Shown here in pieces: positions 2,353 through 64,000 of a stretch of DNA of 64,000 nt; the stretch's first letter is position 1, and every line of letters begins with the position of its first letter. Position numbers and translations under genes: made by a program. The notes under the pieces are model-generated. The model was not told where the DNA came from, did not search any database, and saw only the letters and a list, made by a program, of their open reading frames with translations. Source of the stretch: Phyllobates terribilis (taxonomy: Eukaryota); assembly GCF_046119375.1 (NCBI RefSeq), contig NW_027362769.1, positions 359,290,001 through 359,354,000 on the forward strand, given 5' to 3'.

Positions 2353-2394
2353 GGCTCTTTTTAGAGCCACCACCTTGTCCCCTTCAGAGCTGTA
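2353..2394 (+). terminator. H1 3' stem-loop and histone downstream element (HDE)
   Basis: GGCTCT-TTTT-AGAGCC 2353-2368, then ACCA, then CAGAGCTGTA 2385-2394. Confidence 0.95.
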
Positions 2395-3850
2395 TGATCA
2401 GTGCCACCACCTTGTCCCCGGCAGAGCTGTATGATCAGTGCCACCACCTTGTCCCCGGCAGCGCTGTATGATCAGTGCCACCACCTTGTCCCCGGCAGAG
2501 CTGTATGATCAGAGCCTCCACCTTGTCCCCGGCAGAGCTGTATGATCAGAGCCACCACCTTGTCCCCTCCCTGCAGAGCTGTATGATAAGTGCCACCACC
2601 TTGTCCCCGGCAGAGCTGTATAATCAGTGCCACCACCTTGTCCCCGGCAGCGCTGTATGATCAGTGCCACCACCTTGTCCCCGGCAGCGCTGTATGATCA
2701 GTGCCACCACCTTGTCCCCGGCAGAGCTGTATGATCAGTGCCACCACCTTGTCCCCGGCAGAGCTGTATGATCAGTGCCACCACCTTGTCCCCGGCAGAG
2801 CTGTATGATCAGTGCCACCACCTTGTCCCCGGCAGAGCTGTATGATCAGTGCCACCACCTTGTCCCCGGCAGAGCTGTATGATTAGTTCCACCACCTTGT
2901 CCCCGCCAGAGCTGTATTTTCAGTGCCACCACCTTGTCCCCGCCAGAGCTGTATGATCAGTGCCACCACCTTGTCCCCGGCAGAGCTGTATGATTAGTGC
3001 CACCACCTTGTCCCCGCCAGAGCTGCATGATTAGTGCCACCACCTTGTCCCCGGCAGAGCTGTATTTTCAGTGCCACCACCTTGTCCCCGGCAGAGCTGT
3101 ATGATCAGAGCCACCACCTTGTCCCCTCCCTGCAGAGCTGTATAATCAGTGCCATCATCTTGTCCCCGGCAGAGCTGTATGATCAGAGCCACCACCTTGT
3201 CCCCTGCAGAGCTGTATAATCAGTGCCATCATCTTGTCCCCGGCAGAGCTGTATGATCAGTGCCACCACCTTGTCCCCTGCAGAGCTGTATAATCAGTGC
3301 CATCATCTTGTCCCCGGCAGAGCTGTATGATCAGAGCCACCACCTTGTCCCCTGCAGAGCTGTATGATCAGTGCCACCACCTTGTCCCCGGCAGAGCTGT
3401 ATAAGTGCCACCACCTTGTCCTCTGCAGAGCTGTATAATCAGTGCCACCACCTTGTCCCCGGCAGAGCTGTATAAGTGCCACCACCTTGTCCCCGGCAGA
3501 GCTGTATGATCAGTGCCACCACCTTGTCCCCGGCAGAGCTGTATGATCAGTGCCACCACCTTGTCCCCGGCAGAGCTGTATGATCTGTGCTACCACCTTG
3601 TCCCCGGCAGAGCTGTATGATCAGTGCCACCACCTTGTCCCCTGCAGAGCTTTATGATCAGTGCCACCACCTTGTCCCCGGCAGAGCTGTATGATCAGTG
3701 CCACCACCTTGTCCCCGGCAGAGCTGTATGATCAGTGCCACCACCTTGTCCCCGGCAGAGCTGTATGATCAGAGCCACCACCTTGTCCCCGGCAGAGCTG
3801 TATGATCAGTGCCATCATCTTGTCCCCGGCAGATCTGTATGATCAGTGCC
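2365..3850 (+). repeat. 37-bp tandem array, about 40 copies, built from the H1 cleavage site plus HDE
   Basis: Unit gtgccaccaccttgtccccggcagagctgtatgatca starts inside the 3' arm of the stem-loop. Confidence 0.95.
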
Positions 3851-7350: not shown

Positions 7351-7366
7351 GGCTCTTTTCAGAGCC
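7351..7366 (+). terminator. H4 3' stem-loop
   Basis: GGCTCT-TTTC-AGAGCC followed by ACCA. Confidence 0.95.
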
Positions 7367-7632
7367 ACCACATCTTCTGAGAGGCTACAATCTCCTGTTG
7401 CTGTGCCGGGAGCTGATCTCTACTGTGCACTGGTGATCTCTGTATTCTGGCTGGTAGATCGCTCAGGTGTCCGGTTCTCATCAGTGTAAGTTTTGTGCTT
7501 CCCATATTGGGGAGAACGGCGGACAGTGATTCTATCACTAGTGAGATAACACCGATCCGCGGTTACTACAGAACATTGGATCCAGGTCCTGCAGTGAGAA
7601 GAATGTGACTCTACTACATATTTCCACATCAG

Positions 7633-9160: not shown

Positions 9161-9498
9161 GCAGCGATTATTCCTCGTTTACATCACATACAGGAGTCTG
9201 TAGAGTTTCGGGATTAGGGGAGCAGATCTTTTTCTTCAGTACATTGCATCACAATCACTATTGTGGAGGACTATATACTGATCGGGGATTTATCCTACAA
9301 GAGACATTTCTAGAAAGATCAATTCTACTTTCCCATGCAGATCTCATTATGTCTCCCCGATCATCTCCTCAGCAGTTTTCCAGTAATCCATTTACAGATC
9401 AATTCTACAGCTAAAGGCAGGAGGTTTGTGACAGGACACGTACGATTGTGGATTGCAGATTGCTGAGAGTTCATTGCTCAGAACATTACACTCTGCTG
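9161..9498 (+). other. Block B copy 1, truncated by the L2; near-identical to 61603-61937
   Basis: Direct repeat from gcagcgattattcctcgtttacatc to ctctgctgtcagg. Confidence 0.9.
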
Positions 9499-9762
9499 TC
9501 AGGCATGCAGTATAGGTCAGGCATGCAGTATAGGTCAGGCATGCAGTATAGGTCAGGCATGCAGTATAGGTCAGGCATGCAGTATAGGTCAGGCATGCAG
9601 TATAGGTCGGGCATGCAGTATAGGTCAGGCATGCAGTATAGGTCAGGCATGCAGTATAGGTCAGGCATGCAGTATAGGTCGGGCATGCAGTATAGGTCAG
9701 GCATGCAGTATAGGTCAGGCATGCAGTATAGGTCAGGCATGCAGTATAGGTCAGGCATGCAG
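9499..9762 (+). repeat. 18-bp minisatellite tcaggcatgcagtatagg, about 14.7 copies
   Basis: Tandem copies directly visible, with a tcggg variant. Confidence 0.97.
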
Positions 9763-9860
9763 TTAGATCCTCAGTCATCACATCCTCCTCAGGAGATTCT
9801 TTCCTGCTCAGGTACTGATCGCTCTTCTGCTCTTTCTCTTGTCCTCTCCCTCTTTATCCA

Positions 9861-10066: not shown

Positions 10067-10169
10067 ACTATTGTGCAAAAGGTGAACTGCTGAGAGAAGA
10101 CACAAAATGCAGCGTCTACACACAGAGCACAGCTGTATATAGTGCACAGACTGCACAACAATTATATAC

Positions 10170-23630: not shown

Positions 23631-24010
23631 ACTCTAAGTATACGGGGAACAATCCGGTCACTAAAACCCCACCCCCCCTTTTTTTTCCCCTTCTCTTTCT
23701 CCTTTTTACACATAGGAAATATCCAGACTACTATCCTTCTAAAAACTGGCCTAGAAACCCACGAGACTACCACTACCAGGAACCTCCAAAAAGCCTCCAC
23801 CCCAAAAGACCCACCAGCTATCTCTATCTAATATTTTATCATTTTTTAACCTTCATTATGATTTAACGTCATTTTTATGCGAGATTTACTATTTAAAATA
23901 AAAACTCTTTTATCATCCTCTCTTATTGTCCACATTTTTGTCCCCAACAACCTTCCCCCTTCAAGTATACGGCCTAAACCTTACCAGCGCAGGATATTTT
24001 AACTATTTCT

Positions 24011-33000: not shown

Positions 33001-36000
33001 AGTATATAGAGCAGTGTGTATAGTATATAGAGCAGCCTGTACAGTATATAGAGCTGCCTGTACAGTATATAGAGCAGTGTGTACAGTATATAGAGCTGCC
33101 TGTACAGTATATAGAGCAGTGTGTACAGTATATAGAGCAGCCTGTACAGTATATAGAGCAGTGTGTACAGTATATAGAGCTGCCTGTACAGTATATAGAG
33201 CAGTGTGTACAGTAAATAGACCTGCCTGTACAGTATATAGAGCAGGGTGTACAGTATATAGAGCAGTGTGTATAGTATATAGAGCAGGGTGTACAGTATA
33301 TAGAGCAGTGTGTACAGTATATAGAGCTGCCTCTACAGTATATAGAGCAGGGTGTACAGTATATACAGCAGTGTGTACAGTATATAGAGCAGTGTGTACA
33401 GTATATAGAGCAGCCTGTACAGTATATAGAGCAATGTGTACAGTATATAGAGCTGCCTGTACATTATATAGAGCAGTGTGTACAGTATATAGAGCAGTGT
33501 GTATATTATATAGAGCAGCCTGTACAGTATATAGAGCAGGGTGTACAGTATATAGAGCAGTGTGTACAGTATATAGAGCAGCCTGTACAGTATATAGAGC
33601 AGTGTGTACAGTATATAGAGCAGTGTGTATAGTATATAGAGCTGCCTGTACATTATATAGAGCAGTGTGTACAGTATATAGACCTGCCTGTACAGTATAT
33701 AGAGCAGGGTGTACAGTATATAGAGCAGTGTGTACAGTATATAGAGCAATCTGTACTGTGTATAGAGCAGTGTGTACAGTATATAGAGCAGTGTGTACAG
33801 TATATAGAGCAGCCTGTACAGTATATAGAGCAGTGTGTACAGTATATAGAGCTGCCTGTACAGTATATAGAGCAGTGTGTACAGTTTATAGAGCAGCGTG
33901 TACAGTATATAGAGCAGTGTGTACAGTATATAGAGCAGTGTGTGCAGTATATAGAGCAGTGTGTATAGTATATAGAGCTGCCTGTATAGTATATAGAGCA
34001 GTGTGTACAGTATATAGAGCAGCCTGTACAGTATATAGAGCAGTGTGTACAGTGTCTAGAGCAGTGTGTATAGTATATTGAGCTGCCTGTACAGTATATA
34101 GAGCAGTGTGTACAGTATATAGAGCAGTATATACAGTGTATAGAGCAGTGTGTACAGTATATAGAGCAGTGTGTACAGTATAAAGAGCAGTGTGTATAGT
34201 ATATAGAGCAGTGTGTACAGTATATAGAGAAGCCTGTACAGTATATAGAGCAGTGTGTACAGTATATAGAGAAGCCTGTACAGTATATAGAGCAGTGTGT
34301 ACAGTATATAGAGCAGTCTGTACTGTGTATAGAGCAGTGTGTACAGTATATAGAGCAGCGTGTGCAGTATATAGAGCAGTGTGTACAGTATATAGAGCAG
34401 TGTGTATAGTATATAGAGCTGCCTGTACAGTATATAGAGCAGTGTGTACAGTATATAGAGCAGTATATACAGTGTATAGTGCAGTGTGTACAGTATATAG
34501 AGCTGCCTGTACAGTATATAGAGCAGTGTGTACAGTATATAGAGCAGGGTGTACAGTATATAGAGCAGCCTGTACAGTATATACAGCAACGTGTACAGTA
34601 TATACAGCAGTGTGTACAGTATATAGACCTGCCTGTACAGTATATAGAGCAGTGTGTACAGTATATAGAGCTGCCTGTACAGTATATAGAGCAGCCTGTA
34701 GAGTATATAGAGCAGGGTGTACAGTATATAGAGCAGTGTGTACAGTATATAGAGCAGCCTATACAGTATATAGAGCAGTGTGTACAGTATATAGAGCTGC
34801 CTGTACAGTATATAGAACAGGGTGTACAGTATATAGAGCAGCCTGTACAGTATATAGAGCAGTGTGTACAGTATATAGAACAGTGTGTATAGTATATAGA
34901 GCTGCCTGTACAGTATATAGAGCAGTGTGTACAGTATATAGAGCAGTGTGTACAGTATATTGAGCTGCCTGTACAGTATATAGAGCAGTGTGTACAGTAT
35001 ATAGAGCAGTATATACAGTGTATAGAGCAGTGTGTACAGTATATAGAGCAGTGTGTACAGTATAAAGAGCTGCCTGTACATTATATAGAGCAGTGTGTAT
35101 AGTATATAGCGCAGTCTGTACTGTGTATAGAGCAGTGTGTACAGTACATAGAGCAGCGTGTACAGTATATAGAGCCGTGTGTACAGTATATAGAGCAGCC
35201 TGTACAGTATATAGAGCAGTGTGTATAGTATATAGAGCTGCCTGTACAGTATATAGAGCAGTGTGTACAGTATATAGAGCAGTATATACAGTGTATAGTG
35301 CAGTGTGTACAGTATATAGAGCAGCCTGTACAGTATATAGAGCAGGGTGTACAGTATATAGAGCAGCCTGTACAGTATATACAGCAGTGTGTACAGTATA
35401 TAGAGCTGCCTGTACAGTATATAGAGCAGCCTGTACAGTATAAAGAGCAGGGTGTACAGTATATAGAGCAGTCTGTACAGTATATAGAGCAGGGTGTACA
35501 GTATATAGAGCAGTGTGTACAGTATATAGAGCAGCCTGTACAGTATATAGAGCAGTGTGTACAGTATATAGAACAGTGTGTATAGTATATAGAGCTGCCT
35601 GTACAGTATATAGAGCAGTGTGTACAGTATATAGAGCAGCCTTTACAGTTTATAGAGCAGTGTGTACAGTACATAGAGCTGCCTGTACAGTATATAAAGC
35701 AGTTTGTACAGTATATAGAGCAGTGTGTACAGTATATAGAGCAGCCTGTACAGTATATAGAGCAGTGTGTACAGTATATAGAGCAGTGTGTACAGTATAT
35801 AGAGCAGCCTGTACAGTATATAGAGCAGTGTGTACAGTATATAGAGCTGTGTGTACAGTATATAGAGCTGCCTGTACAGTTTATAGAGCAGTTTGTACAG
35901 TATATAGAGCTGCCTGTACAGTATATAGAGCAGTGTGTACAGTATATAGAGCAGCCTGTACAGTATATAGAGCAGTGTGTACAGTATATAGAGCAGCGTG

Positions 36001-37754
36001 TACAGTATATAGAGCAGTGTGTACAGTATATAGAGCAGTGTGTATAGTATATAGAGCTGCCTGTACAGTATATAGAGCAGTGTGTACAGTATATAGAGCA
36101 GTGTGTACAGTATATAGAGCAGTATATACAGTGTATAGTGCAGTGTGTACAGTATATAGAGAAGCCTGTACAGTATATAGAGCAGTGTGTACAGTATATA
36201 GAGCAGTCTGTACTGTGTATAGAGCAGTGTGTACAGTATATAGAGCAGCGTGTACAGTATATAGAGCAGTGTGTACAGTATATAGAGCAGTGTGTATAGT
36301 ATATAGAGCTGCCTGTACAGTATATAGAGCAGTGTGTACAGTATATAGAGCAGTGTGTACAGTATATAGAGCAGTATATACAGTGTATAGTGCAGTGTGT
36401 ACAGTATATAGAGCTGCCTGTACAGTATATAGAGCAGTGTGTACAGTATATAGAGCAGGGTGTACAGTTTATAGAGCAGCCTGTACAGTATATACAGCAA
36501 CGTGTACAGTATATACAGCAGTGTGTACAGTATATAGAGCTGCCTGTACAGTATATAGAGCAGTGTGTATAGTATATAGAGCTGCCTGTACAGTATATAG
36601 AGCAGCCTGTAGAGTATATAGAGCAGGGTGTACAGTATATAGAGCAGTGTGTACAGTATATAGAGCAGCCTATACAGTATATAGAGCAGTGTGTACAGTA
36701 TATAGAGCAGTGTGTACAGTATATAGAGCTGCCTGTACAGTATATAGAACAGGGTGTACAGTATATAGAGCAGCCTGTACAGTATATAGAGCAGTGTGTA
36801 GAGTATATAGAACAGTGTGTATAGTATATAGAGCTGCCTGTACAGTATATAGAGCAGTGTGTACAGTATATAGAGCAGTGTGTACAGTATATTGAGCTGC
36901 CTGTACAGTATATAGAGCAGTGTGTACAGTATATAGAGCAGTATATACAGTGTATAGAGCAGTGTGTACAGTATATAGAGCAGTGTGTACAGTATAAAGA
37001 GCTGCCTGTACAGTATATAGAGTAGTGTGTACAGTATATAGAGCTGCCTGTACAGTATATAGAACAGGGTGTACAGTATATAGAGCAGCCTGTACAGTAT
37101 ATAGAGCAGTGTGTACAGTATATAGAACAGTGTGTATAGTATATAGAGCTGCCTGTACAGTATATAGAGCAGTGTGTACAGTATATAGAGCAGTGTGTAC
37201 AGTATATTGAGCTGCCTATACAGTATATAGAGCAGTGTGTACAGTATATAGAGCAGTATATACAGTGTATAGAGCAGTGTGTACAGTATATAGAGCAGTG
37301 TGTACAGTATAAAGAGCTGCCTGTACAGTATATAGAGCAGTGTGTACAGTATATAGAGCAGCCTGTACAGTATATAGAGCAGTGTGTACAGTATATAGAG
37401 CAGTCTGTACTGTGTATAGAGCAGTGTGTACAGTATATAGAGCAGCGTGTACAGTATATAGAGCCGTGTGTACAGTATATAGAGCAGCCTGTACAGTATA
37501 TAGAGTAGTGTGTATAGTATATAGAGCTGCCTGTACAGTATATAGAGCAGTGTGTACAGTATATAGAGCAGTATATACAGTGTATAGTGCAGTGTGTACA
37601 GTATATAGAGCAGCCTGTACAGTATATAGAGCAGGGTGTACAGTATATAGAGCAGCCTGTACAGTATATACAGCAGTGTGTACAGTATATAGAGCTGCCT
37701 GTACAGTATATAGAGCAGTGTGTATAGTATATAGAGCTGCCTGTACAGTATATA
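24011..37754 (+). repeat. 21-bp satellite, segment II (about 650 units)
   Basis: Continuous tandem array with higher-order duplications. Confidence 0.99.
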
Positions 37755-44217: not shown

Positions 44218-44554
44218 AGTGTATAAATTGTTTTATTTATGTTTACCTGTGTATTGTTGCTTGTGTATAATTTTGTGTTTCTAGTTATTTGTAGGAGTCC
44301 TTGGTGGATTTACCAGGAATCCTTGTACATAGTTGGAGCGCAACCCAGGACGGACTAAAGACTGTTAAGGACTCGGGGTAGGACAAACCCCTACCTGGTT
44401 AGGTCTCCCTGTTTTGGTGAAATGGACACCTTGCTTTTCTTCAAAGACTGCACCCGGTTACGGACATGCCGTAACCATCTTTATATGTTTTTCTTATTGT
44501 ATTATTATTGTTTTTATCTTGTTATGTTTTTCTAAAATATGTTTAGTCCCGGAG

Positions 44555-47500
44555 TACAGTATATAGAGCAGTGTGTATAGTATATAGAGCTGCCTGTACA
44601 GTATATAGAGCAGCCTGTACAGTATTTAGAGCAGGGTGTACAGTATATAGAGCAGCCTGTACAGTATATAGAGCAGTGTGTACAGTATATAGAGCAGTGT
44701 GTACAGTATATAGAGCAGCCTGTACAGTTTATAGAGCAGTGTGTACAGTATATAGAGCAGTGTGTACAGTATATAGAGCAGCCTGTACAGTTTATAGAGC
44801 AGTGTGTACAGTATATAGAGCAGTGTGTACAGTTTATAGAGCAGTGTGTACAGTATATAGAGCAGTGTGTACAGTATATAGAGCAGCCTGTACAGTTTAT
44901 AGAGCAGTGTGTACAGTATATAGAGCTGCCTGTACAGTATATAGAGCAGTGTGTACAGTATATAGAGCAGCCTGTACAGTATACAGAGCAGGGTGTACAG
45001 TATATAGAGCAGTGTGTACAGTATATAGAGCAGCCTGTACAGTATATAGAACAGTGTGTATAGTATATAGAGCTGCCTGTACAGTATATAGAGCAGTGTG
45101 TACAGTATATAGAGCAGCCTTTACAGTTTATAGAGCAGTGTGTACAGTATATAGAGCAGCCTGTACAGTATATAAAGCAGGGTGTACAGTATATAGAGCA
45201 GTTTGTACAGTATATAGAGCAGTGTGTACACTATATAGAGCAGCCTGTACAGTATATAGAGCAGTGTGTACAGTATATAGAGCAGTGTGTACAGTATATA
45301 GAGCAGCCTGTACAGTTTATAGAGCAGTGTGTACAGTATATAGAGCTGCCTGTACAGTATATAGAGCAGTGTGTACAGTATATAGAGCTGCCTGTACAGT
45401 ATATAGAGCAGTGTGTACAGTATATAGAGCAGCCTGTACAGTACATAGAGCAGCGTGTGTATAGTATATAGAGCAGCCTGTACAGTATATAGAGCAGTGT
45501 GTACAGTATATAGAGCAGCCTGTACAGTATATAGAGCAGTGTGTACAGTATATAGAGCAGCCTGTACAGTATATAGAGCAGGGTGTACAGTATATAGAGC
45601 AGGGTGTACAGTATATAGAGCAGCCTGTACAGTATATAGAGCAGCCTGTACAGTATATAGAGCAGTGTGTACAGTATATAGAGCAGCCTGTACAGTTTAT
45701 AGAGCAGTGTGTACAGTATATAGAGCCGTGTGTATAGTATATAGAGCAGCCTGTACAGTATATAGAGCAGCCTGTACAGTATATAGAGCAGTGTGTACAG
45801 TATATAGAGCAGCCTGTACAGTATATAGAGCAGTGTGTATAGTATATAGAGCAGCCTGTACAGTATATAGAAGAGTGTGTACAGTATATAGAGCAGTGTG
45901 TACAGTATATAGAGCAGCCTGTACAGTATATAGAGCAGTGTGTGCAGTATATAGAGCTGCCTGTACAGTATATAGAGCAGTGTGTACAGTATATAGAGCA
46001 GCCTGTACAGTATATAGAGCAGTGTGTGCAGTATATAGAGCTGCCTGTACAGTATATAGGGCAGTGTGTACAGTATATAGAGCAGCCTGTACAGTATATA
46101 GAGCAGCCTGTACAGTATATAGAGCAGTGCGTTTAGTATATAGAGCTGCCTCTACAGTATATAGAGCAGTGTGTACAGTATATAGAGCAGGGTGTACAGT
46201 ATATAGAGCAGTGTGTACAGTATATAGAGCAGCCTGTACAGTATACTGAACAGTGTACAGTATATAGAGCAGCCTGTACAGTATATAGAGCAGCGTGTAC
46301 AGTATATAGAGCAGTGTGTATAGTATATAGAGCAGCCTGTACAGTATATAGAGCAGCGTGTGCAGTATATAGAGCAGGGTGTACAGTATATAGAGCAGTG
46401 TGTATAGTATATAGAGCTGCTTGTACAGTATATAGAGCAGTGTGTACAGTATATAGAGCAGCCTGTACAGTATATAGAGCTGCCTGTACAGTATATAGAG
46501 CAGTGTGTACAGTATATAGAGCAGCGTGTACAGTATATAGAGCTGCCTGTACAGTATATAGAGCAGTGTGTACAGTATATAGAGCAGTGTGTATAGTATA
46601 TAGAGCTGCTTGTACAGTATATAGAGCAGTGTGTACAGTATATAGAGCAGCCTGTACAGTATATAGAGCTGCCTGTACAGTATATAGAGCAGTGTGTACA
46701 GTATATAGAGCAGCGTGTACAGTATATAGAGCTGCCTGTACAGTATATAGAGCAGTGTGTACAGTATATAGAGCAGTATATACAGTGTATAGAGCAGTGT
46801 GTACAGTATATAGAGCAGCCTGTACAGTATATAGAGCAGTGTGTACAGTATATAGAGCAGCCTGTACAGTATATAGAGCAGTGTGTAGAGTATATAGAGC
46901 AGCGTGTACAGTATATAGAGCAGTGTGTACAGTATATAGAGCAGCCTGTACAGTATATAGAGCAGTGTGTACAGTATATAGAGCAGCCTGTACAGTATAT
47001 AGAGCAGTGTGTAGAGTATATAGAGCAGCGTGTACAGTATATAGAGCAGTGTGTACAGTATATAGAGCAGCCTGTACAGTATATAGAGCAGTGTGTAGAG
47101 TATATAGAGCAGCGTGTACAGTATATAGAGCAGTGTGTACAGTATATAGAGCTGCCTGTACAGTATATAGAGCAGTGTGTACAGTATATAGAGCAGCCTG
47201 TACAGAATATAGAGCAGCCTGTACAGTATATAGATCAGTGTGTACAGTATATAGTTCAGTGTGTACAGTATATAGAGCAGCCTGTAGAGTATATAGAGCA
47301 GTGTGTACAGTATATAGAGCAGTATATACAGTGTATAGAGCAGTGTGTACAGTATATAGAGCAGTGTGTACAGTATATAGAGCAGTGTGTGCAGTATATA
47401 GAGCAGCATATACAGTGTACAGAGCAGTGTGTACAGTATATAGAGCAGTGTGTACAGTATAAAGAGCTGCCTGTACAGTATATAGATCAGTGTGTACAGT

Positions 47501-50500
47501 ATATAGAGCTGCCTGTACAGTATATAGAGCAGTGTGTACAGTATATAGAGCAGCCTGTACAGAATATAGAGCAGCCTGTACAGTATATAGATCAGTATGT
47601 ACAGTATATAGAGCTGCCTGTACAGTATATAGAGCAGTGTGTACAGTATATAGAGCTGCCTGTACAGTATATAGAGCAGCCTGTACAGAATATAGAGCAG
47701 CCTGTACAGTATATAGATCAGTGTGTACAGTATATAGTTCAGTTTCTACAGTATATAGAGCAGTGTGTACAGTATATAGAGCTGCCTGTACAGTATATAG
47801 AGCAGCCTGTACAGAATATAGAGCAGCCTGTACAGTATATAGATCAGTGTGTACAGTATATAGTTCAGTTTGTACAGTATATAGAGCAGCCTGTACAGTA
47901 TATAGATCAGTGTGTACAGTATATAGTTCAGTGTGTACAGTATATAGAGCAGCCTGTACAGTATATAGAGCAGGGTGTACAGTTTATAGAGCAGTCTGTA
48001 CAGTATATAGTTCAGTGTGTACAGTATATAGAGCAGAGTGTACAGTATATAGATCAGTGTGTACAGTATATAGTTCAGTTTGTACAGTATATAGAGCAGC
48101 CTGTACAGTATATAGTTCAGTGTGTACAGTATATAGAGCAGCCTGTACAGTATATAGAGCAGGGTGTACAGTATATAGAGCAGTCTGTACAGTATATAGT
48201 TCAGTGTGTACAGTATATAGAGCAGAGTGTACAGTATATAGAGCAGTGTGTACAGTATATAGAGCAGCCTGTACAGTATATAGAGCAGTGTGTACAATAT
48301 ATAGAGCAGTGTGTATAGTATACAGAGCAGCCTGTACAGTATATAGAGCAGTGTGTACAGTATATAGAGCAGTATATACAGTGTATAGAGCAGTGTGTAC
48401 AGTATATAGAGCAGCCTGTACAGTATATAGAGCTGCCTGTACAGTATATAGATCAGTGTGTACAGTATATAGAGCAGCCTGTACAGAATATAGAGCAGCC
48501 TGTACAGTATATAGATCAGTGTGTACAGTATATAGTTCAGTGTGTACAGTATATAGAGCAGTGTGTACAGTATATAGAGCAGTATATACAGTGTATAGAG
48601 CAGTGTGTAAAGTATATAGAGCAGTGTGTACAGTATATAGAGTAGTGTGTACTGTATATAGAGCAGCCTGTACAGTATATAGAGCAGTGTGTACAGTATA
48701 TAGATCAGTGTATACAGTGTATAGAGCAGTGTGTAAAGTATATAGATCAGTGTGTACAGTATATAGTTCAGTGTGTACAGTATATAGAGCAGTGTGTACA
48801 GTATATAGAGCAGTATATACAGTGTATAGAGCAGTGTGTAAAGTATATAGAGCAGTGTGTACAGTATATAGAGTAGTGTGTACTGTATATAGAGCAGCCT
48901 GTACAGTATATAGAGCAGTGTGTACAGTATATAGAGCAGTATATACAGTGTATAGAGCAGTGTGTAAAGTATATAGAGCAGTGTGTACAGTATATAGAGT
49001 AGTGTGTACTGTATATAGAGCTGCCTGTACAGTATATAGAGCAGTGTGTACAGTATATAGAGCAGCCTGTACAGTATATAGAGCAGTGTGTACAGTATAT
49101 AGAGCTGCCTGTACAGTATATAGAGCAGTGTGTACAGTATATAGAGCAGCCTGTACAGTACATAGAGCAGCGTGTACAGTATATAGAGCAGTGTGTATAG
49201 TATATAGAGCAGCCTGTACAGTATATAGAGCAGTGTGTACAGTATATAGAGCAGCCTGTACAGTATATAGAGCAGTGTGTACAGTATATAGAGCAGCCTG
49301 TACAGTATATAGAGCAGTGTGTACAGTATATAGAGCCGTGTGTATAGTATATAGAGCAGCCTGTACAGTATATAGAAGAGTGTGTACAGTATATAGAGCA
49401 GTGTGTACAGTATATAGAGTAGTGTGTACAGTATATAGAGCTGCCTGTACAGTATATAGAGCAGTGTGTACAGTATATAGAGCAGCCTGTATAGTATATA
49501 GAGCAGTGTGTACAGTATATAGAGCTGCCTGTACAGTATATAGAGCAGTGTGTACAGTATATAGAGCAGCCTGTACAGTACATAGAGCAGCGTGTACAGT
49601 ATATAGAGCAGTGTGTATAGTATATAGAGCAGCCTGTACAGTATATAGAGCAGTGTGTACAGTATATAGAGCAGCCTGTACAGTATATAGAGCAGTGTGT
49701 ACAGTATATAGAGCAGCCTGTACAGTATATAGAGCAGTGTGTACAGTATATAGAGCAGTGTGTACAGTATATAGAGCAGCCTGTACAGTATATAGAGCAG
49801 TGTTTGCAGTATATAGAGCTGCCTGTACAGTATATAGAGCAGTGTGTACAGTATATAGAGCAGCCTGTACAGTATATAGAGCAGTGTGTACAGTATATAG
49901 AGCAGCCTGTACAGTATATAGAGCAGCCTGTACAGTATATAGATCAGTGCGTTTAGTATATAGAGCTGCCTCTACAGTATATAGAGCAGTGTGTACAGTA
50001 TATAGAGCAGGGTGTACAGTATATAGAGCAGTGTGTACAGTATATAGAGCAGCCTGTACAGTATACAGAACAGTGTACAGTATATAGAGCAGCCTGTACA
50101 GTATATAGAGCAGTGTGTACAGTATATAGAGCAGCGTGTACAGTATATAGAGCAGTGTGTATAGTATATAGAGCAGCCTGTACAGTATATAGAGCAGCGT
50201 GTGCAGTATATAGAGCAGGGTGTACAGTATATAGAGCAGCGTGTACAGTATATAGAGCAGTGTGTACAGTATATAGAGCAGTGTGTATACTATATAGAGC
50301 TGCTTGTACAGTATATAGAGCAGTGTGTACAGTATATAGAGCAGCCTGTACAGTATATAGAGCTGCCTGTACAGTATATAGAGCAGTGTGTACAGTATAT
50401 AGAGCAGCGTGTACAGTATATAGAGCTGCCTGTACAGTATATAGAGCAGTGTGTACAGTATATAGAGCAGTATATACAGTGTATAGAGCAGTGTGTACAG

Positions 50501-52250
50501 TATATAGAGCAGCCTGTACAGTATATAGAGCAGTGTGTACAGTATATAGAGCAGCCTGTACAGTATATAGAGCAGTGTGTAGAGTATATAGAGCAGCGTG
50601 TACAGTATATAGAGCAGTGTGTACAGTATATAGAGCTGCCTGTACAGTATATAGAGCAGTGTGTACAGTATATAGAGCAGCCTGTACAAAATATAGAGCA
50701 GCCTGTACAGTATATAGATCAGTGTGTACAGTATATAGTTCAGTGTGTACAGTATATAGAGCAGCCTGTAGAGTATATAGAGCAGTGTGTACAGTATATA
50801 GAGCAGTATATACAGTGTATAGAGCAGTGTGTACAGTATATAGAGCAGTGTGTACAGTATATAGAGCAGTGTGTGCAGTATATAGAGCAGCATATACAGT
50901 GTACAGAGCAGTGTGTACAGTATATAGAGCAGTGTGTACAGTATATATAGCTGCCTGTACAGTATATAGAGCAGTGTGTGCAGTATATAGAGCAGCCTGT
51001 ACAGAATATAGAGCAGCCTGTACAGTATATAGATCAGTGTGTACAGTATATAGTTCAGTTTGTACAGTATATAGAGCTGCCTGTACAGTATATAGAGCAG
51101 TGTGTATAGTATATAGAGCTGCCTGTACAGTATATAGAGCAGTGTGTACAGTATATAGAGCAGCCTGTACAGAATATAGAGCAGCCTGTACAGTATATAG
51201 ATCAGTGTGTACAGTATATAGTTCAGTTTGTACAGTATATAGAGCAGCCTGTACAGTATATAGATCAGTGTGTACAGTATATAGTTCAGTGTGTACAGTA
51301 TATAGAGCAGCCTGTACAGTATATAGAGCAGGGTGTACAGTATATAGAGCAGTCTGTACAGTATATAGTTCAGTGTGTACAGTATATAGAGCAGAGTGTA
51401 CAGTATATAGATCAGTGTGTACAGTATATAGTTCAGTTTGTACAGTATATAGAGCAGCCTGTACAGTATATAGATCAGTGTGTACAGTATATAGTTCAGT
51501 GTGTACAGTATATAGAGCAGCCTGTACAGTATATAGAGCAGGGTGTACAGTATATAGAGCAGTCTGTACAGTATATAGTTCAGTGTGTACAGTATATAGA
51601 GCAGAGTGTACAGTATATAGAGCAGTGTGTACAGTATATAGAGCAGCCTGTACAGTATATAGAGCAGTGTGTACAATATATAGAGCAGTGTGTATAGTAT
51701 ACAGAGCAGCCTGTACAGTATATAGAGCAGTGTGTACAGTATATAGAGCAGTATATACAGTGTATAGTGCAGTGTGTACAGTATATAGAGCAGCCTGTAC
51801 AGTATATAGAGCTGCCTGTACAGTATATAGATCAGTGTGTACAGTATATAGAGCAGCCTGTACAGAATATAGAGCAGCCTGTACAGTATATAGATCAGTG
51901 TGTACAGTATATAGTTCAGTGTGTACAGTATATAGAGCAGTGTGTACAGTATATAGAGCAGTATATACAGTGTATAGAGCAATGTGTACAGTATATAGAG
52001 CAGTGTGTACAGTATATAGAGCAGTATATACAGTGTATAGAGCAGTGTGTAAAGTATATAGAGCAGTGTGTACAGTATATAGAGTAGTGTGTACAGTATA
52101 TAGATCAGTGTATTCAGTATATAGAGCAGCCTGTACAGTATATGAAGTTATCTGTACATTGTATACAGTATTGTGTTTAATATATACAGTAGTAAGTACA
52201 CTGGATGTAGCAGATTGTTCAGTTTATACAGCAGTCAGTACAGTATAGAG
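44555..52250 (+). repeat. 21-bp satellite, segment III (about 365 units), decaying at the right end
   Basis: Tandem array; degenerate units after about 52140. Confidence 0.98.
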
Positions 52251-53015
52251 AGAATGTGTACCTTATATACATGAGTTTTTACACTATATGCAGCAGTGTA
52301 TAACAGGGGAGATGTAATAAAGTCCCATTTGATATACAGTATATTGCAGTACTGTTTGTACTCTCCATAATTTCTTTAGGAGCATTAAGCCTCTCATGGA
52401 CATATCCTTACACTCATACATGAATACTGACTTTATTTCTTTTTCACGGATCTCACCGACACATTTGTTAATGTCACGGGTATATCTAATTTAGACACCG
52501 CCATGTCGCATTTCTCCTTTGTATCCCAGGAGTCTTTTGTTGTATTTATATACTCAACCTCCAATTAATTTCCTTCCCTTTACATATCTCTTCTTCACAG
52601 ACACATCACACTTTCAATATATATTTTTCATCAAGAATTAGTAAATTATTTACATTAATATGTATTTTTTATATTTCCACTAGTTGTCTTTTAATTCTCA
52701 TGCAAAACATTTTTTTCAGTCACAATGATTAAAAATTAATCTTACCTTTTATAGAGACACCATTTTTTTATTTGCATTGATTACTTATTTTTTTTTTTTA
52801 CATTTATTTCTACTGAATATTTTTTTCATTAGTGCATACAACATTTTTTAAACCTTTTTTTCCTTTTGGAAAATTCATTTTTTTGCTCAATGTTCTCTTT
52901 TTCACTTTTTTTTTCTTTTACCCCAGCATTATTTGTATTTGACAATGGAATGATCACGCACACCTCATATGGGCGGCTTTATCAATTGGTGCAATTTTTT
53001 GAATCGTCAAACTTT

Positions 53016-56864: not shown

Positions 56865-56944
56865 AGAGGAAGACCGTCACCGCTATGGACGTGGTGTACG
56901 CGCTCAAGCGCCAGGGCTGCACTCTCTACGGCTTCGGAGGTTAA
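56865..56944 (+). pseudogene. H4: 3' fragment of histone H4 (about codon 78 to stop) with an R-to-C change
   Basis: Matches 7239-7318 except cgc>tgc; 3' flank to 57101 is near-identical to 7319-7471. Confidence 0.95.
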
Positions 56945-56976
56945 TTGTATTCTCTGCTCCATCCTGACAACCCAAA

Positions 56977-56992
56977 GGCTCTTTTCAGAGCC
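56977..56992 (+). terminator. Stem-loop of the H4 fragment
   Basis: GGCTCT-TTTC-AGAGCC; 4-nt insertion before the HDE relative to the intact H4. Confidence 0.9.
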
Positions 56993-58041
56993 ACCACATC
57001 TTCTGAGTGAGAGGCTACAATCTCCTGTTGCTGTGCCGGGAGCTGATCTCTACTGTGCACTGGTGATCTCTGTATTCTGGCTGGTGGATCGCTCAGGTGT
57101 CCAGTTTGGGTGATGTGATGTGTCTTCTTATGGATCTATAACAAATATTACACACGGTGGATGCGGGGGAGTGGTGATACATATAGCTCTGTGCACACAG
57201 CTCATACCCTGCTGTGATGCGATTATTACAGAACAGAAATCCAAGTCTTGCCATGAGATGAATGTGTTGATTCTGCTACATGATATTTTTTCAGATCAGT
57301 GTAGGATGCAGCGAATATTCACTGCATGAGGCAGCTGGATAGATGGCCGCCCTGTGTACCCGGTATGTAGACTCCAATGTGATGACCGCTGATCTGTTTA
57401 GCCAATGAGTAGTAACCAGATATAGGGGTTTCCTCCTTCGTTTAACTCCTTAGTGGCCGTGTGTCTGCTGATCACACACATGATTTACTCAAGCGGCTCC
57501 TTCCCCCACTACAGACCCGCAGCGCTCACATCAGGCTCCTGGTAGAACATGAGACTTGTCTTAGTCTGTGGTGGGATCGGAACCGACACCACAGGGAATC
57601 CGCAAAGAATAATACGCGGGTGAGTGAGGAGCCTCCTGCACGTGTAGATGGAGCGGAGAAGCATCAGATCACTGCTGAATATACAGATAACGGCACTGAT
57701 TGGAATTAACCCCCTCTCCCCCTACATGAGGATTGTGTGGAGCGCAGAAAACCCAAGCAAAGTAATCGTCCAATTTATAGGTTTTGTGGAATAAAAAACA
57801 TAATGACTGGACTCCATGCTTAATCTTCCCCTACGGAAATATTTACCAGTCATCCCTTGTACACTGCTGAATATACTAGATCACTGCACCATCACCACAC
57901 CAGTAACATGTAGCAGGATCTACCTGTGCATTTAATGCTTCTACTCTATAGTAAACAATGTATCGTGTAGTTCTATCTGACGCTGCAGGCGATGGTTCTC
58001 TTATCCACCAGCGGTGCCGGCTCTGATGAGGAGGATGTGGT

Positions 58042-58057
58042 GGCTCTTAGAAGAGCC
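58042..58057 (-). terminator. H2A 3' stem-loop
   Basis: Minus strand GGCTCT-TCTA-AGAGCC, then ACCA, then CAGAGCC. Confidence 0.95.
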
Positions 58058-58091
58058 TTTGGTTGTTCGGACAGATGTGGAGGAGCGGCGC

Positions 58092-59154
<1,063 letters not shown>

Positions 59155-59188
59155 NNNNNTCCGTCTGCTGCTCCGCCATCACCCCAAA

Positions 59189-59204
59189 GGCTCTTCTAAG
59201 AGCC
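59189..59204 (+). terminator. H2B 3' stem-loop
   Basis: GGCTCT-TCTA-AGAGCC followed by ACCA. Confidence 0.95.
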
Positions 59205-59209
59205 ACCAC

Positions 59210-61112
59210 CCCGTCTACATCAGAGCTGTGGCTGCTCCTGTGTCCTCTCCCGTCTACATCAGAGCTGTGGCTGCTCCTGTGTCCTCTCCCGTCTACATCA
59301 GAGCTGTGGCTGCTCCTGTGTCCTCTCCCGTCTACATCAGAGCTGTGGCTGCTCCTGTGTCCTCTCCCGTCTACATCGGAGCTGTGGCTGCTCCTGTGTC
59401 CTCTGCCGTCTACATCGGAGCTGTGGCTGCTCCTGTGTCCTCTGCCGTCTACATCGGAGCTGTGGCTGCTCCTGTGTCCTCTGCCGTCTACATCGGAGCT
59501 GTGGCTGCTCCTGTGTCCTCTCCCGTCTACATCGGAGCTGTGGCTGCTCCTGTGTCCTCTCCCGTCTCCATCGGAGCTGTGGCTGCTCCTGTGTCCTCTC
59601 CCGTCTACATCGGAGCTGTGGCTGCTCCTGTGTCCTCTCCCGTCTCCAGAGCTGTGGCTGCTCCTGTGTCCTCTCCCGTCTACATCAGGGCTGTGGCTGC
59701 TCCTGTGTCCTCTCCCGTCTACATCAGAGCTGTGGCTGCTCCTGTGTCCTCTCCCGTCTACATCAGAGCTGTGGCTGCTCCTGTGTCCTCTCCCGTCTAC
59801 ATCAGAGCTGTGGCTGCTCCTGTGTCCTCTCCCGTCTACATCAGGGCTGTGGCTGCTCCTGTGTCCTCTCCCGTCTCCATCAGAGCTGTGGCTGCTCCTG
59901 TGTCCTCTCCCGTGTACATCAGAGCTGTGGCTGCTCCTGTGTCCTCTCCCGTGTACATCAGAGCTGTGGCTGCTCCTGTGTCCTCTCCCGTCTACATCAG
60001 AGCTGTGGCTGCTCCTGTGTCCTCTCCCGTCTACATCGGAGCTGTGGCTGCTCCTGTGTCCTCTGCCGTCTACATCGGAGCTGTGGCTGCTCCTGTGTCC
60101 TCTGCCGTCTACATCGGAGCTGTGGCTGCTCCTGTGTCCTCTGCCGTCTCCATCGGAGCTGTGGCTGCTCCTGTGTCCTCTCCCGTCTACATCAGAGCTG
60201 TGGCTGCTCCTGTGTCCTCTCCCGTCTACATCGGAGCTGTGGCTGCTCCTGTGTCCTCTCCCGTCTACATCGGAGCTGTGGCTGCTCCTGTGTCCTCTCC
60301 CGTCTACATCGGAGCGGTGGCTGCTCCTGTGTCCTCTCCCGTCTACATCGGAGCTGTGGCTGCTCCTGTGTCCTCTGCCGTCTACATCGGAGCGGTGGCT
60401 GCTCCTGTGTCCTCTCCCGTCTACATCGGAGCGGTGGCTGCTCCTGTGTCCTCTCCCGTCTACATCGGAGCTGTGGCTGCTCCTGTGTCCTCTCCCGTCT
60501 ACATCAGGGCTGTGGCTGCTCCTGTGTCCTCTCCCGTCTCCATCAGAGCTGTGGCTGCTCCTGTGTCCTCTCCCGTCTCCATCAGAGCTGTGGCTGCTCC
60601 TGTGTCCTCTCCCGTCTCCATCAGGGCTGTGGCTGCTCCTGTGTCCTCTCCCGTCTCCATCAGAGCTGTGGCTGCTCCTGTGTTCTCTCCCGTCTCCATC
60701 AGAGCTGTGGCTGCTCCTGTGTCCTCTCCCGTCTCCATCAGAGCTGTGGCTGCTCCTGTGTCCTCTCCCGTCTCCATCAGAGCTGTGGCTGCTCCTGTGT
60801 CCTCTCCCGTGTACATCAGAGCTGTGGCTGCTCCTGTGTCCTCTCCCGTGTACATCAGAGCTGTGGCTGCTCCTGTGTCCTCTCCCGTCTACATCAGAGC
60901 TGTGGCTGCTCCTGTGTCCTCTCCCGTCTACATCAGAGCTGTGGCTGCTCCTGTGTCCTCTCCCGTCTACATCAGAGCTGTGGCTGCTCCTGTGTCCTCT
61001 CCCGTCTACATCGGAGCTGTGGCTGCTCCTGTGTCCTCTCCCGTCTACATCAGAGCGGTGGCTGCTCCTGTGTCCTCTCCCGTCTCCATCAGAGCTGTGG
61101 CTGCTCCTGTGT
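59210..61112 (+). repeat. 39-bp tandem array, about 49 copies, each carrying the H2B HDE
   Basis: Unit cccgtctacatcagagctgtggctgctcctgtgtcctct starts 5 nt after the stem-loop. Confidence 0.97.
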
Positions 61113-61134
61113 TCTGTCTATTCACAGGGTAAAT

Positions 61135-61149
61135 GACAGGTGGCGCTAG
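61135..61149 (+). promoter_or_regulatory. CTCF-like motif
   Basis: GACAGGTGGCGCTAG matches the core of the CTCF consensus; the 5' positions deviate. Confidence 0.4.
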
Positions 61150-61371
61150 TAGAGCTGATTAACCCTTTCTAGACTGATGGTGAAACCTATGAATGAGTCC
61201 TTCACAGCTCTGATCCTTTCAGTAATCTTATGAGCGAGTTGTCCTGTGTTCAGTGGCTTTTTACTCCACCCCTTGCTCCCCAGATCTGATATTCCGGGGT
61301 CTCCTCCATCCTGTATAACATGATTCGTTTAGTTCATGTTTCTCCGAATAACATGAGACATTTGTGTAGAT

Positions 61372-61937
61372 TTTATCTATAATTCCGGACACTTCTTTTC
61401 ACAGCGGAAGAAATTACATCATTACATTTAGAAGTTGTGGAAACTACAATGAGCGGGAAATTCATAATCCGTAGAGGAAGAGGAGGAGCTAATGTTACCA
61501 ATGGGTGAATTCCCGCTCAGTGGCTGATGGATTTTCTGTTCTTTGTCATCATATAACACGTGGTCCTATGTCGGGCCGATATCGGGAACACCTGCATGTG
61601 TGCAGCGATTATTCCTCGTTTACATCATACAGGAGTCTGTAGAGTTTCGGGATTAGGGCAGCAGATCTTTCTCTTCCGTACATTGCATCACAATCACTAT
61701 TGTGGAGGACTATATACTGATCGGGGATTTATCCTACAAGAGACATTTCTAGAAAGATCAATTCTACTTTCCCATGCAGATCTCATTATGTCTCCCCGAT
61801 CATCTCCTCAGCAGTTTTCCAGTAATCCATTTACAGATCAATTCTACAGCTAAAGGCAGGAGGTTTGTGACAGGACACGTACGATCGTGGATTGCAGATT
61901 GCTGAGAGTTCATTGCTCAGAACATTACACTCTGCTG
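61372..61937 (+). other. Block B copy 2 (inverted paralog of the H3-H4 spacer), with a damaged third E2F module at 61439-61496
   Basis: GGAAACTACAATGAGCGGGAAATTCA...GAGGAGCTAATGTT; the CHR/CCAAT segment is deleted. Confidence 0.8.
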
Positions 61938-62702
61938 TCAGGAGCCTATAGGTCAGGCATGCAGTATAGGTCAGGCATGCAGTATAGGTCAGGCATGCAG
62001 TATAGGTCAGGCATGCAGTATAGGTCAGGCATGCAGTATAGGTCAGGCATGCAGTATAGGTCAGGCATGCAGTATAGGTCGGGCATGCAGTATAGGTCGG
62101 GCATGCAGTATAGGTCAGGCATGCAGTATAGGTCAGGCATGCAGTATAGGTCGGGCATGCAGTATAGGTCGGGCATGCAGTATAGGTCGGGCATGCAGTA
62201 TAGGTCGGGCATGCAGTATAGGTCGGGCATGCAGTATAGGTCGGGCATGCAGTATAGGTCGGGCATGCAGTATAGGTCGGGCATGCAGTATAGGTCGGGC
62301 ATGCAGTATAGGTCAGGCATGCAGTATAGGTCAGGCATGCAGTATAGGTCAGGCATGCAGTATAGGTCAGGCATGCAGTATAGGTCGGGCATGCAGTATA
62401 GGTCAGGCATGCAGTATAGGTCAGGCATGCAGTATAGGTCAGGCATGCAGTATAGGTCGGGCATGCAGTATAGGTCGGGCATGCAGTATAGGTCGGGCAT
62501 GCAGTATAGGTCAGGCATGCAGTATAGGTCGGGCATGCAGTATAGGTCGGGCATGCAGTATAGGTCAGGCATGCAGTATAGGTCGGGCATGCAGTATAGG
62601 TCGGGCATGCAGTATAGGTCAGGCATGCAGTATAGGTCAGGCATGCAGTATAGGTCAGGCATGCAGTATAGGTCAGGCATGCAGTATAGGTCAGGCATGC
62701 AG
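61938..62702 (+). repeat. 18-bp minisatellite, about 42 copies
   Basis: Same unit as 9499-9762, expanded. Confidence 0.97.
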
Positions 62703-62800
62703 TTAGATCCTCAGTCATCACATCCTCCTCAGGAGATTCTTTCCTGCTCAGGTACTGATCGCTCTTCTGCTCTTTCTCTTGTCCTCTCCCTCTTTATCCA

Positions 62801-63007: not shown

Positions 63008-63114
63008 ACTATTGTGCAAAAGGTGAACTGCTGAGAGAAGACACAAAATGCAGCGTCTACACACAGAGCACAGCTGTATATAGTGCACAGACTGCACAAC
63101 AATTATATACAGCA

Positions 63115-64000
63115 GTGTGTATAGTATATAGAGCTGCCTGTACAGTATATAGAGCTGCCTGTACAGTATATAGAGCAGTGTGTATAGTATATAGAGCAGC
63201 CTGTACATTATATAGAGCAGCGTGTACAGTATATAGAGCAGTGTGTGCAGTATATAGAGCTGCCTGTACAGTATATAGAGCAGTGTGTACAGTATATAGA
63301 GCAGCGTGTATAGTATATAGAGCAGTCTGTACAGTATATAGAGCAGCCTGTACAGTATATAGAGCTGCCTGTACAGTATATAGAGCAGTGTGTATAGTAT
63401 ATAGAGCTGCCTGTACAGTATATAGAGCAGTGTGTACAGTATATAGAGCAGCGTGTATAGTATATAGAGCAGTCTGTACAGTATATAGAGCAGCCTGTAC
63501 AGTATATAGAGCTGCCTGTACAGTATATAGAGCAGTGTGTATAATATATAGAGCCGCCTGTACAGTATATAGAGCAGTGTGTACAGTATATAGAGCAGCC
63601 TGTACAGTTTGTAGAGCAGGGTGTACAGTATATAGAGCAGTGTGTACAGTATATAGAGCAGCCTGTACAGTATATAGAGCAGTGTGTGCAGTATATAGAG
63701 CAGCCTGTACAGTATATAGAGCAGTGTGTACAGTATATAGAGCAGCCTGTACAGTATATAGAGCAGCGTGTGCAGTATATAGAGCAGTGTGTACAGTATA
63801 TAGAGCAGCCTGTACATTATATAGAGCAGTGTGTACAGTATATAGAGCAGCGTGTACAGTATATAGTTCAGTGTGTACAGTATATAGTTCAGTGTGTACA
63901 GTATATAGAACAGTCTGTACAGTATATAGAGCAGTGTGTACAGTATATAGAGCAGCCTGTGCAGTATATAGAGCAGTGTGTACAGTATATAGAGCAGCCT
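63115..64000 (+). repeat. 21-bp satellite, start of the second array (runs off the window end)
   Basis: Same unit and same degenerate lead-in as at 10100-10170. Confidence 0.98.

What the first reader, a model, noticed from the sequence alone, without database searches (positions are those of the whole stretch)
59210..61112. Independent second HDE array (39 bp x about 49) directly behind H2B
Seen: a different unit sequence and length from the H1 array, yet again the amplified segment contains the gene's own HDE (CAGAGCTGTGGC; 8 Watson-Crick pairs + 2 G-U + 1 further pair to U7). The commonest HDE variants (GGAGCTG, AGGGCTG) are A>G changes opposite U7 uridines and keep G-U pairing, though some GAGCGG variants break it. 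Two independent amplifications of the same functional motif in one cluster suggest either selection or a shared mutational mechanism at the U7 cleavage site.
Basis: partly seen in the sequence, partly recalled or inferred. Interest (0 to 1): 0.8.

Follow-up and report, generated by a model that had tools for sequence, protein, structure and literature searches.

The report
Repeat array grown from H2B tail
Right behind a frog histone H2B gene, the 39 bases that carry the signal for cutting the H2B message have been copied 49 times head to tail; the copying is real and started on the spot, but the extra copies look like ordinary drifting repeat DNA rather than a working device.

Summary
A 39-bp x 48.9 array (59210-61112, 97% matches) begins one base after the ACCAC that follows the H2B stem-loop. 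Every unit carries CAGAGCTGTGGC, which is predicted to pair strongly with the U7 5' end.

The array arose in place. Its first unit sits in the native post-stem-loop context. Its last unit runs into a flank that aligns with a single-copy H2B paralogue flank seen in a public run.

It is independent of the 37-bp H1 array at 2366-3850. The two units share only the 9-mer CAGAGCTGT.

Two of 14 arrays starting within 30 nt of six stem-loops is more than chance (P about 0.001, post hoc).

Nothing supports selection on the extra U7 sites:
- The HDE core is the most polymorphic part of the unit.
- Pair-preserving changes are 2 of 7 events across both arrays, against about 25% expected.
- Variant blocks repeat, and neighbouring units are more alike than shuffled ones, as unequal exchange would give.

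The unit is very abundant in small runs of three organisms.

This scan has already found the same H1 and H2B arrays many times elsewhere in this genome, and those follow-ups reached the same neutral reading. I found no published description. Why the arrays seed at histone 3' ends is unresolved.

The parts
58685..58707 (+). H2B promoter hallmarks: octamer ATTTGCAT and TATAAATA; CCAAT boxes lie upstream at 58621 and 58648
   Evidence: Pattern search; sequence
58774..59154 (+). H2B coding region. The first 33 codons are readable and the rest is masked N (58875-59159). The length fits 126 codons plus a stop. Intactness cannot be checked.
   Evidence: ORF list; N run; arithmetic
59189..59204 (+). 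H2B 3' stem-loop GGCTCT-TCTA-AGAGCC
   Evidence: RF00032 match 59184-59229, 31.5 bits, E 6e-6; RNA fold
59205..59209 (+). ACCAC, the expected cleavage region. The cleavage position is inferred from the known histone 3' processing pathway and was not mapped here.
   Evidence: Sequence
59221..59232 (+). Gene-proximal HDE CAGAGCTGTGGC, inside array unit 1. The motif starts 11 nt after ACCAC, the same spacing as in H2A and H1.
59210..61112 (+). 39-bp minisatellite: 49 units, 15 variants, with repeated variant blocks
61113..61140 (+). Distal junction. The last unit (TGTGTTCTGT) runs into a unique flank that aligns with the single-copy flank of an H2B paralogue.
2366..3850 (+). Comparison: 37-bp H1 array, 40 units. 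Each unit begins with GCCACCACC (the end of the stem plus the cleavage site).

Best explanation
This is a minisatellite that was born in place. The 39 bp directly after the H2B cleavage site were duplicated once: an 11-nt spacer, the U7-binding HDE, and 19 nt beyond it. The duplication was probably by slippage or template switching at short C-rich homology.

The array then grew to 49 units by unequal exchange and replication slippage of single units and multi-unit blocks. It belongs to a family that has spread with the histone cluster and is now very abundant.

Only the first unit, at the native distance from the stem-loop, serves the gene as its HDE. The other 48 have no stem-loop and drift neutrally. 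The HDE is in every unit because of where the duplication started, not because it was selected.

Shown here: anatomy, in-place origin, independence from the H1 array, block structure, and no excess conservation of the HDE.

Inferred: the duplication mechanism, that the extra copies are neutral, and that histone 3' ends are a favoured site for such events. The cause of that preference is not established.
For: - Anatomy.
- In-place origin at the near end: unit 1 is the native sequence after stem-loop-ACCAC.
- In-place origin at the far end: the last unit continues into a flank that aligns with a 407-nt contig of run X1. That contig carries stem-loop + ACCCAC + the first 27 nt of the unit once, then unique sequence.
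- Growth by local exchange: the unit-type string shows repeated blocks ABCC, GHHA and AAAB. Mean neighbour distance is 0.96 against 1.70 after shuffling, and none of 20,000 shuffles was as low.
- No constraint on the HDE: the core holds 3 of 8 segregating sites and has the highest diversity (0.098 against 0.028). In the H1 array all four HDE-core variant sites break U7 pairing.
- Independence from H1.
- High copy number: in three small runs (34-128 million letters) the summed word depth on the units is 370-41,000, while the H2B UTR and promoter are at 0. Organisms B and C hold 0.83 of the sampled words.
- The variant positions C1G, A8C and T18G recur in those runs, so they are family-wide subtypes.
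Against: - The selection test has little power: 8 segregating sites at 97% identity.
- The position next to the stem-loop is non-random (P about 0.001) and I cannot explain it.
- The two genes with arrays (H2B -18.8, H1 -14.0 kcal/mol) are the two with the strongest predicted U7 pairing among five gene types. The chance of that is 0.1. It could point to a role for the motif or for U7.
- Whether the array is transcribed is unresolved. A cyclic 69-nt unit contig is present at depth 35.6 in a probable RNA run. Trace DNA of so abundant a repeat could give the same signal.
- The library type of runs X5-X7 is unknown. Adapters and a PhiX-sized longest contig were seen, so depth cannot be turned into a copy number.
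Confidence: 0.62

Rival explanations
1. The extra HDE copies work. On transcripts that escape cleavage at the stem-loop, the downstream units recruit U7 snRNP and give back-up cleavage and Pol II termination. Alternatively they concentrate or buffer U7 snRNP at the histone locus. Selection then keeps such arrays behind H1 and H2B.
For: - All unit variants keep predicted U7 duplexes of -14 to -18.8 kcal/mol, beyond the first percentile of random sequence.
- Arrays sit behind the two genes with the strongest HDEs.
- There is no AATAAA or ATTAAA for 3.8 kb from the start of the array, so read-through would lack an obvious alternative end.
- Repeated HDE-like motifs in human LTR12 elements are reported to mediate U7-dependent repression (bioRxiv 10.1101/2023.08.25.554787).
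- Read-through past an H2B stem-loop is seen for a paralogue in a probable RNA run whose promoter depth is zero.
Against: - The HDE core is the most variable part of the unit, while the invariant stretch is positions 19-34, most of it outside the core.
- The T18G and H1 A23C variants weaken pairing by 4-5 kcal/mol and still persist.
- High retained complementarity is expected anyway in a 97%-identical young array.
- The downstream units lack a stem-loop.
- There are no CCAAT motifs, unlike the LTR12 case.
- Copy number varies widely between clusters according to other notes of this scan, as for neutral satellites.
Confidence: 0.12
2. Coincidence and ascertainment. The genome is rich in tandem repeats. 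Two arrays happened to arise beside stem-loops in an ancestral cluster unit and were then multiplied with the cluster. There is no hotspot and no function.
For: - There are 14 separate arrays in 64 kb, most of them away from histone 3' ends.
- The many H1 and H2B arrays noted elsewhere in the genome may go back to only two events.
- My enrichment interval was set post hoc.
Against: - P = 0.0012 for two hits in this window.
- Other notes of the scan report H2B arrays with other periods, including 48 bp and a further satellite starting at the H2B HDE. If true, that means more than two events at the same spot. I did not verify this.
Confidence: 0.15
3. Reverse direction. A pre-existing 39-bp satellite landed behind H2B, and its CAGAGCTGT was taken over as the gene's HDE.
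For: The unit is far more abundant than this one array.
Against: - Both array ends are in phase with a single-copy H2B flank.
- The spacing from ACCAC to the HDE equals that of H2A, and ATCAGAGC is shared with H2A.
- No copy of the unit lies elsewhere in the window.
Confidence: 0.04

Closest known systems
Classical minisatellites / gene-flank-derived satellite DNA (for example satellites derived from SINEs or retrotransposon parts: PMC10702118, PMC7004042)
   Same: Head-to-tail units of tens of bases. Variant units lie in blocks. Growth is by unequal exchange. The array is seeded from a pre-existing functional sequence.
   Different: The seed is the histone pre-mRNA 3' processing signal (spacer plus HDE), and the array starts at the cleavage site. 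My literature searches found no description of this.
Newt histone clusters embedded in satellite DNA with read-through transcription on lampbrush chromosomes (Diaz et al. 1981; Gall et al. 1981; Epstein et al. 1986, PMC2114352; reviewed in PMC5615363)
   Same: In an amphibian, satellite DNA directly adjoins histone genes, and failed termination can carry transcription into it.
   Different: To my knowledge (own recollection), the newt satellites are 222-330 bp and are not known to derive from the HDE. Here read-through into the array is not shown.
HDE-like motifs in human HERV1/LTR12 repeats and lincRNAs that mediate U7-dependent repression (10.1101/2023.08.25.554787 / PMC11417402)
   Same: Multiple copies of a U7-complementary motif sit in repeated DNA outside the normal stem-loop context.
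   Different: The LTR12 motifs are dispersed, not tandem. They lie next to CCAAT/NF-Y sites, of which the array has none. They also have experimental support. Nothing of that kind is shown here.
Canonical replication-dependent histone 3' processing signal (stem-loop + ACCCA + HDE)
   Same: Unit 1 together with the upstream stem-loop forms a complete signal with normal spacing.
   Different: Units 2-49 carry the HDE alone.

Membership tests
Minisatellite / tandem-repeat array | Head-to-tail units of about 10-100 bp in an array of 0.5 kb or more | tested here: met
   39 bp x 48.9, 1.9 kb, 97% matches
Minisatellite / tandem-repeat array | Variant units clustered and repeated in blocks (turnover by unequal exchange) | tested here: met
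   Blocks ABCC, GHHA and AAAB each occur twice. Neighbour distance is 0.96 against 1.70 after shuffling; none of 20,000 shuffles was as low.
Minisatellite / tandem-repeat array | Copy-number polymorphism between individuals or loci | not testable with these tools
   The single read-laying run returned contigs only. Other notes of the scan report 16-, 28- and 29-copy H2B arrays elsewhere; I did not verify them.
Functional histone 3' processing signal | Conserved 16-nt stem-loop followed by ACCCA/ACCA | tested here: met
   Met for unit 1 only: RF00032 at 31.5 bits, below the gathering score of 34, with loop UCUA. Units 2-49 have no stem-loop.
Functional histone 3' processing signal | Purine-rich HDE complementary to the U7 5' end at a fixed distance from the cleavage site | tested here: met
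   Met for unit 1: the motif starts 11 nt after ACCAC, and the duplex with mammalian U7 is -18.8 kcal/mol.
Functional histone 3' processing signal | Cleavage actually occurs there | tested here: inconclusive
   The contigs of run X1 stop or branch at the stem-loop and come from a paralogue. No reads with direction or ends were available.
U7-regulated HDE-like repeats (LTR12 type) | Several near-perfect U7-complementary motifs | tested here: met
   All 49 units, with predicted duplexes of -14.1 to -18.8 kcal/mol
U7-regulated HDE-like repeats (LTR12 type) | Adjacent CCAAT/NF-Y sites | tested here: not met
   No CCAAT or ATTGG in the array
U7-regulated HDE-like repeats (LTR12 type) | Expression changes when U7 is depleted | not testable with these tools
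   Needs an experiment
Newt-type histone-adjacent transcribed satellite | Read-through transcripts from histone promoters into the satellite | tested here: inconclusive
   A unit contig at depth 35.6 is present in a probable RNA run. DNA carry-over of an abundant repeat cannot be excluded.

The most novel reading that the evidence does not exclude
Histone 3' ends with strong U7 pairing are a true mutational hotspot. Either U7-dependent cleavage and Pol II termination in S phase cause local fork stalling and template switching that seeds tandem duplications at the cleavage site, or the resulting multi-HDE arrays are kept because they act as back-up U7 cleavage and termination sites or as U7 snRNP sinks at the histone locus. 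In either case an RNA-processing signal would drive satellite birth or be reused in array form.
Probability: 0.15. Interest if true: 0.75.

Novelty: new variant of a known kind. Interest (0 to 1): 0.35.

Why it matters
This is a clean case of satellite birth. Both junctions of the founding duplication are still readable, and the seed is a known functional RNA-processing element.

If the preference for histone 3' ends holds up in a census, it would tie histone 3'-end formation in S phase to local genome instability, which is a testable link. If the extra HDEs bind U7, they would be a natural U7 decoy or a fail-safe terminator.

As it stands, the array itself is ordinary repeat DNA. The same thing has already been logged many times in this genome, so this locus adds detail rather than a new phenomenon.

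Tried and rejected
- RNA evidence. The stem-loop junction contigs belong to a paralogue with an extra C (ACCCAC) and a single-copy flank. Array transcription cannot be separated from DNA carry-over. There is no information on ends or strand.
- Hairpin-driven expansion. Single-stranded DNA folds of three units of both arrays, on both strands, are no more stable than shuffles (z +0.2 to +1.6). I reject this as a property of the units. The stem-loop hairpin at the left border remains a possible stalling site but is untested.
- Array RNA structure hiding the HDE. The fold gives z = -1.8, which is not remarkable.
- The idea that the window's big 21-bp satellite (which contains AGAGCAG) is also HDE-derived. 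Its U7 duplex is -10.9 kcal/mol, within the null range, and it does not start at a stem-loop. Not supported here.
- A coding reading of the array. It is open in all three forward frames, but that follows from 8% A content, and the long ORF is out of frame with H2B.
- Rfam found nothing but histone stem-loops in the region.
- The frog's own U7 sequence could not be obtained. The mouse/human 5' end was used instead.
- Literature searches for a described HDE-derived satellite or for dendrobatid satellites found none. The library lacks most subscription journals.

Full report
**What is there**

The window is a frog histone cluster; earlier notes of this scan call it a poison frog. Rfam finds six histone 3' stem-loops:

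| Gene | Stem-loop match | Strand |
|---|---|---|
| H1 | 2348-2393 | + |
| H3 | 4943-4988 | + |
| H4 | 7346-7391 | + |
| 5'-truncated H4 remnant | 56972-57017 | + |
| H2A | 58017-58062 | - |
| H2B | 59184-59229 | + |

The H4 remnant was identified.

H2B has the usual octamer, TATA and CCAAT promoter elements. Its N-terminal tail is readable. The rest of the coding region is masked N (58875-59159), with a length that fits 126 codons.

The stem-loop GGCTCT-TCTA-AGAGCC (59189-59204) is followed by ACCAC. At 59210 a perfect-phase tandem array begins: period 39, 48.9 copies, 97% matches. I parsed 49 units in 15 variants, with one 3-bp deletion.

**The U7 site**

Each unit holds CAGAGCTGTGGC. Human and mouse U7 5' ends are printed in PMC7026596. 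Against the mouse sequence, the consensus unit gives 11 contiguous pairs (8 Watson-Crick, 2 G-U, 1 C-G) plus three more after a bulge, at -18.8 kcal/mol.

| Gene | Predicted U7 duplex (kcal/mol) |
|---|---|
| H2B | -18.8 |
| H1 | -14.0 |
| H2A | -11.3 |
| H3 | -10.5 |
| H4 | -9.8 |

The first percentile of random 29-mers from the window is -13.5. The frog's own U7 could not be obtained, so this rests on conservation of that region.

CAGAGC starts 11 nt after ACCAC in H2B and in H2A, and the H1 motif sits at the same distance from the stem. This fits a real HDE in unit 1.

**Origin in place**

Unit 1 is simply the native sequence after the cleavage site.

At the far end, the last unit (…CTGCTCCTGTGTTCTGT) runs on into unique sequence. 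A 407-nt contig in run X1 carries the stem-loop 3' half, then ACCCAC, then the first 27 nt of the unit once, then unique sequence. That unique sequence aligns, with small gaps, both to the unit tail and to this window's distal flank.

So a paralogous H2B gene keeps the flank in single copy, and both borders of the array here are in phase with it. This argues for H2B flank becoming the array, not the reverse. No copy of the unit lies elsewhere in the window.

**Independence from the H1 array**

The H1 array (2366-3850, 37 bp x 40) has a different period and a different phase. Its unit starts with GCCACCACC, the end of the stem plus the cleavage site.

Over all rotations the two units share only CAGAGCTGT. 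With that 9-mer masked, the alignment score is 6, against a shuffled mean of 7.3.

**Is the position more than chance?**

The window has 14 separate tandem arrays. Two start within -8..+30 nt of the six oriented stem ends, where 0.051 are expected (P = 0.0012 from 300,000 random placements).

I set that interval after seeing the data. The genome's many copies may all descend from two events.

That the units contain the HDE adds nothing further. Any unit longer than about 23 nt starting at the cleavage site must include it.

**Selection on the HDE**

In the H2B array, the segregating unit positions are 1, 6, 8, 13, 15, 18, 35 and 38. Three of these eight lie in the 8-nt core AGAGCTGT. The core has the highest diversity (0.098 against 0.028 outside). 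Positions 19-34 never vary.

In the H1 array, 4 of 17 segregating sites lie in the core (A23C, G24T, G27T, T28C), and all four break pairing.

Pair-preserving changes are A13G and A15G in H2B, against T18G. That makes 2 of 7 events over both arrays. With three preserving changes among the eight possible transitions, and transitions about two thirds of events, roughly 25% is expected. There is no excess.

Power is low because the arrays are young.

**Mode of growth**

Written as unit types, the array reads AAAABCCCBDBEFAAAFGHHABCCIABBJBKJBFGGLMGGGHHAAABNO. The blocks ABCC, GHHA and AAAB each occur twice.

Neighbouring units differ by 0.96 bases on average, against 1.70 after shuffling. None of 20,000 shuffles was as low. 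This is the signature of local duplication and unequal exchange.

Neither array has unusual single-strand hairpin potential.

**Abundance and other organisms**

In three small runs of unknown library type, the summed word depth on the three units I laid is 370-41,000. The runs are X5, X6 and X7 (organisms B, C and A; 34-128 million letters). In the same runs the H2B UTR and promoter are at 0.

The variant positions C1G, A8C and T18G recur there. So the unit is a high-copy family shared by at least three labelled organisms, and this array's variants are family-wide subtypes.

The longest contig in all three runs is 5,416 nt, which is PhiX-sized, and adapters appear at loose ends. I therefore do not convert depth into a copy number.

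DNA runs of organism A hold 0.58-0.92 of the sampled words. Organisms D and E hold only 0.17.

**Transcription**

Run X1 behaves like RNA. The H2A contig stops about 50 nt upstream of the ATG, and the shared promoter has no depth. X1 contains contigs that cross an H2B stem-loop into downstream flank, but these belong to the paralogue.

A cyclic 69-nt consensus-unit contig is present at depth 35.6. Trace DNA of so abundant a repeat would look the same. Read-through into this array is therefore neither shown nor excluded.

There is no AATAAA or ATTAAA between 59210 and 63000.

**Comparison with what is known**

I found no paper describing a satellite or minisatellite derived from the histone downstream element. 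The library is incomplete.

The nearest precedents are:
- ordinary minisatellites and satellites seeded from functional or mobile sequences;
- the newt histone clusters that adjoin satellite DNA and are read through on lampbrush chromosomes (PMC2114352, PMC5615363);
- dispersed HDE-like motifs in human LTR12 elements with reported U7-dependent repression.

The array meets the minisatellite criteria. Only unit 1 meets those of a processing signal. The array lacks the CCAAT context of the LTR12 case.

**Relation to earlier notes of this scan**

The same H1-type and H2B-type arrays were already reported at many places in this genome. Follow-ups judged them real, apparently undescribed, and neutral.

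My tests on this locus agree with that reading. This report adds:
- the single-copy paralogue flank that fixes the direction of origin;
- the block structure of the array;
- the in-window enrichment figure;
- the observation that arrays sit behind the two genes with the strongest predicted U7 pairing (chance 0.1).

**Verdict**

The most likely reading is a neutrally drifting minisatellite seeded at the H2B cleavage site. Why histone 3' ends seed such arrays remains open.

Noticed in passing
window 61204-61215 (- strand): The 12-mer ATCAGAGCTGTG, identical to the H2B HDE with its 5' context, lies inverted 92 nt past the end of the array. No stem-loop is nearby. About 0.008 such matches are expected in the window by chance. 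It could be a remnant of an inverted H2B flank.
   Followed up: partly
window 56865-57106: The second H4-type stem-loop (56972-57017) belongs to a 5'-truncated H4 remnant. It is 97% identical to 7239-7476 and has a 5-nt insertion in the HDE region. It lies next to a retrotransposon pol ORF on the minus strand (54.3-56.4 kb).
   Followed up: partly
run X1 contig laid at window 59183-59236: A paralogous H2B 3' end has the canonical ACCCA spacer (one extra C). It carries the first 27 nt of the 39-bp unit once, then about 370 nt of unique flank. It is present in a probable RNA run at a depth like that of the H2A 5' UTR, which suggests read-through or unprocessed H2B transcripts from that copy.
   Followed up: partly
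window 61602-61942 and 9161-9503: The 340 bp leading into the two 18-bp arrays (61947-62703 and 9498-9763) are 98% identical direct copies. Thus the segment behind the H2B array repeats the segment behind H4.
   Followed up: no
window 10163-15522, 24010-37754, 44554-52299, 63104-63998: A 21-bp satellite (TATATAGAGCAGTGTGTACAG, with 42/63/84-bp higher-order periods) fills more than 27 kb of the window. It splits the cluster together with a Ty3/gypsy-type element (39.2-44.2 kb) and a reverse-transcriptase ORF (16.0-17.9 kb).
   Followed up: no
window 59210-61112: The + strand of the array has only 8% A and 66% pyrimidines. As a result all three forward frames are open across 1.9 kb. This is an effect of composition, not a gene.
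   Followed up: yes
runs X5, X6, X7: The longest contig is 5,416 nt in all three runs (PhiX size plus k-1), and Illumina adapters abut array sequence. These look like low-diversity or short-insert libraries with a PhiX spike-in, so repeat depths from them are not copy numbers.
   Followed up: no
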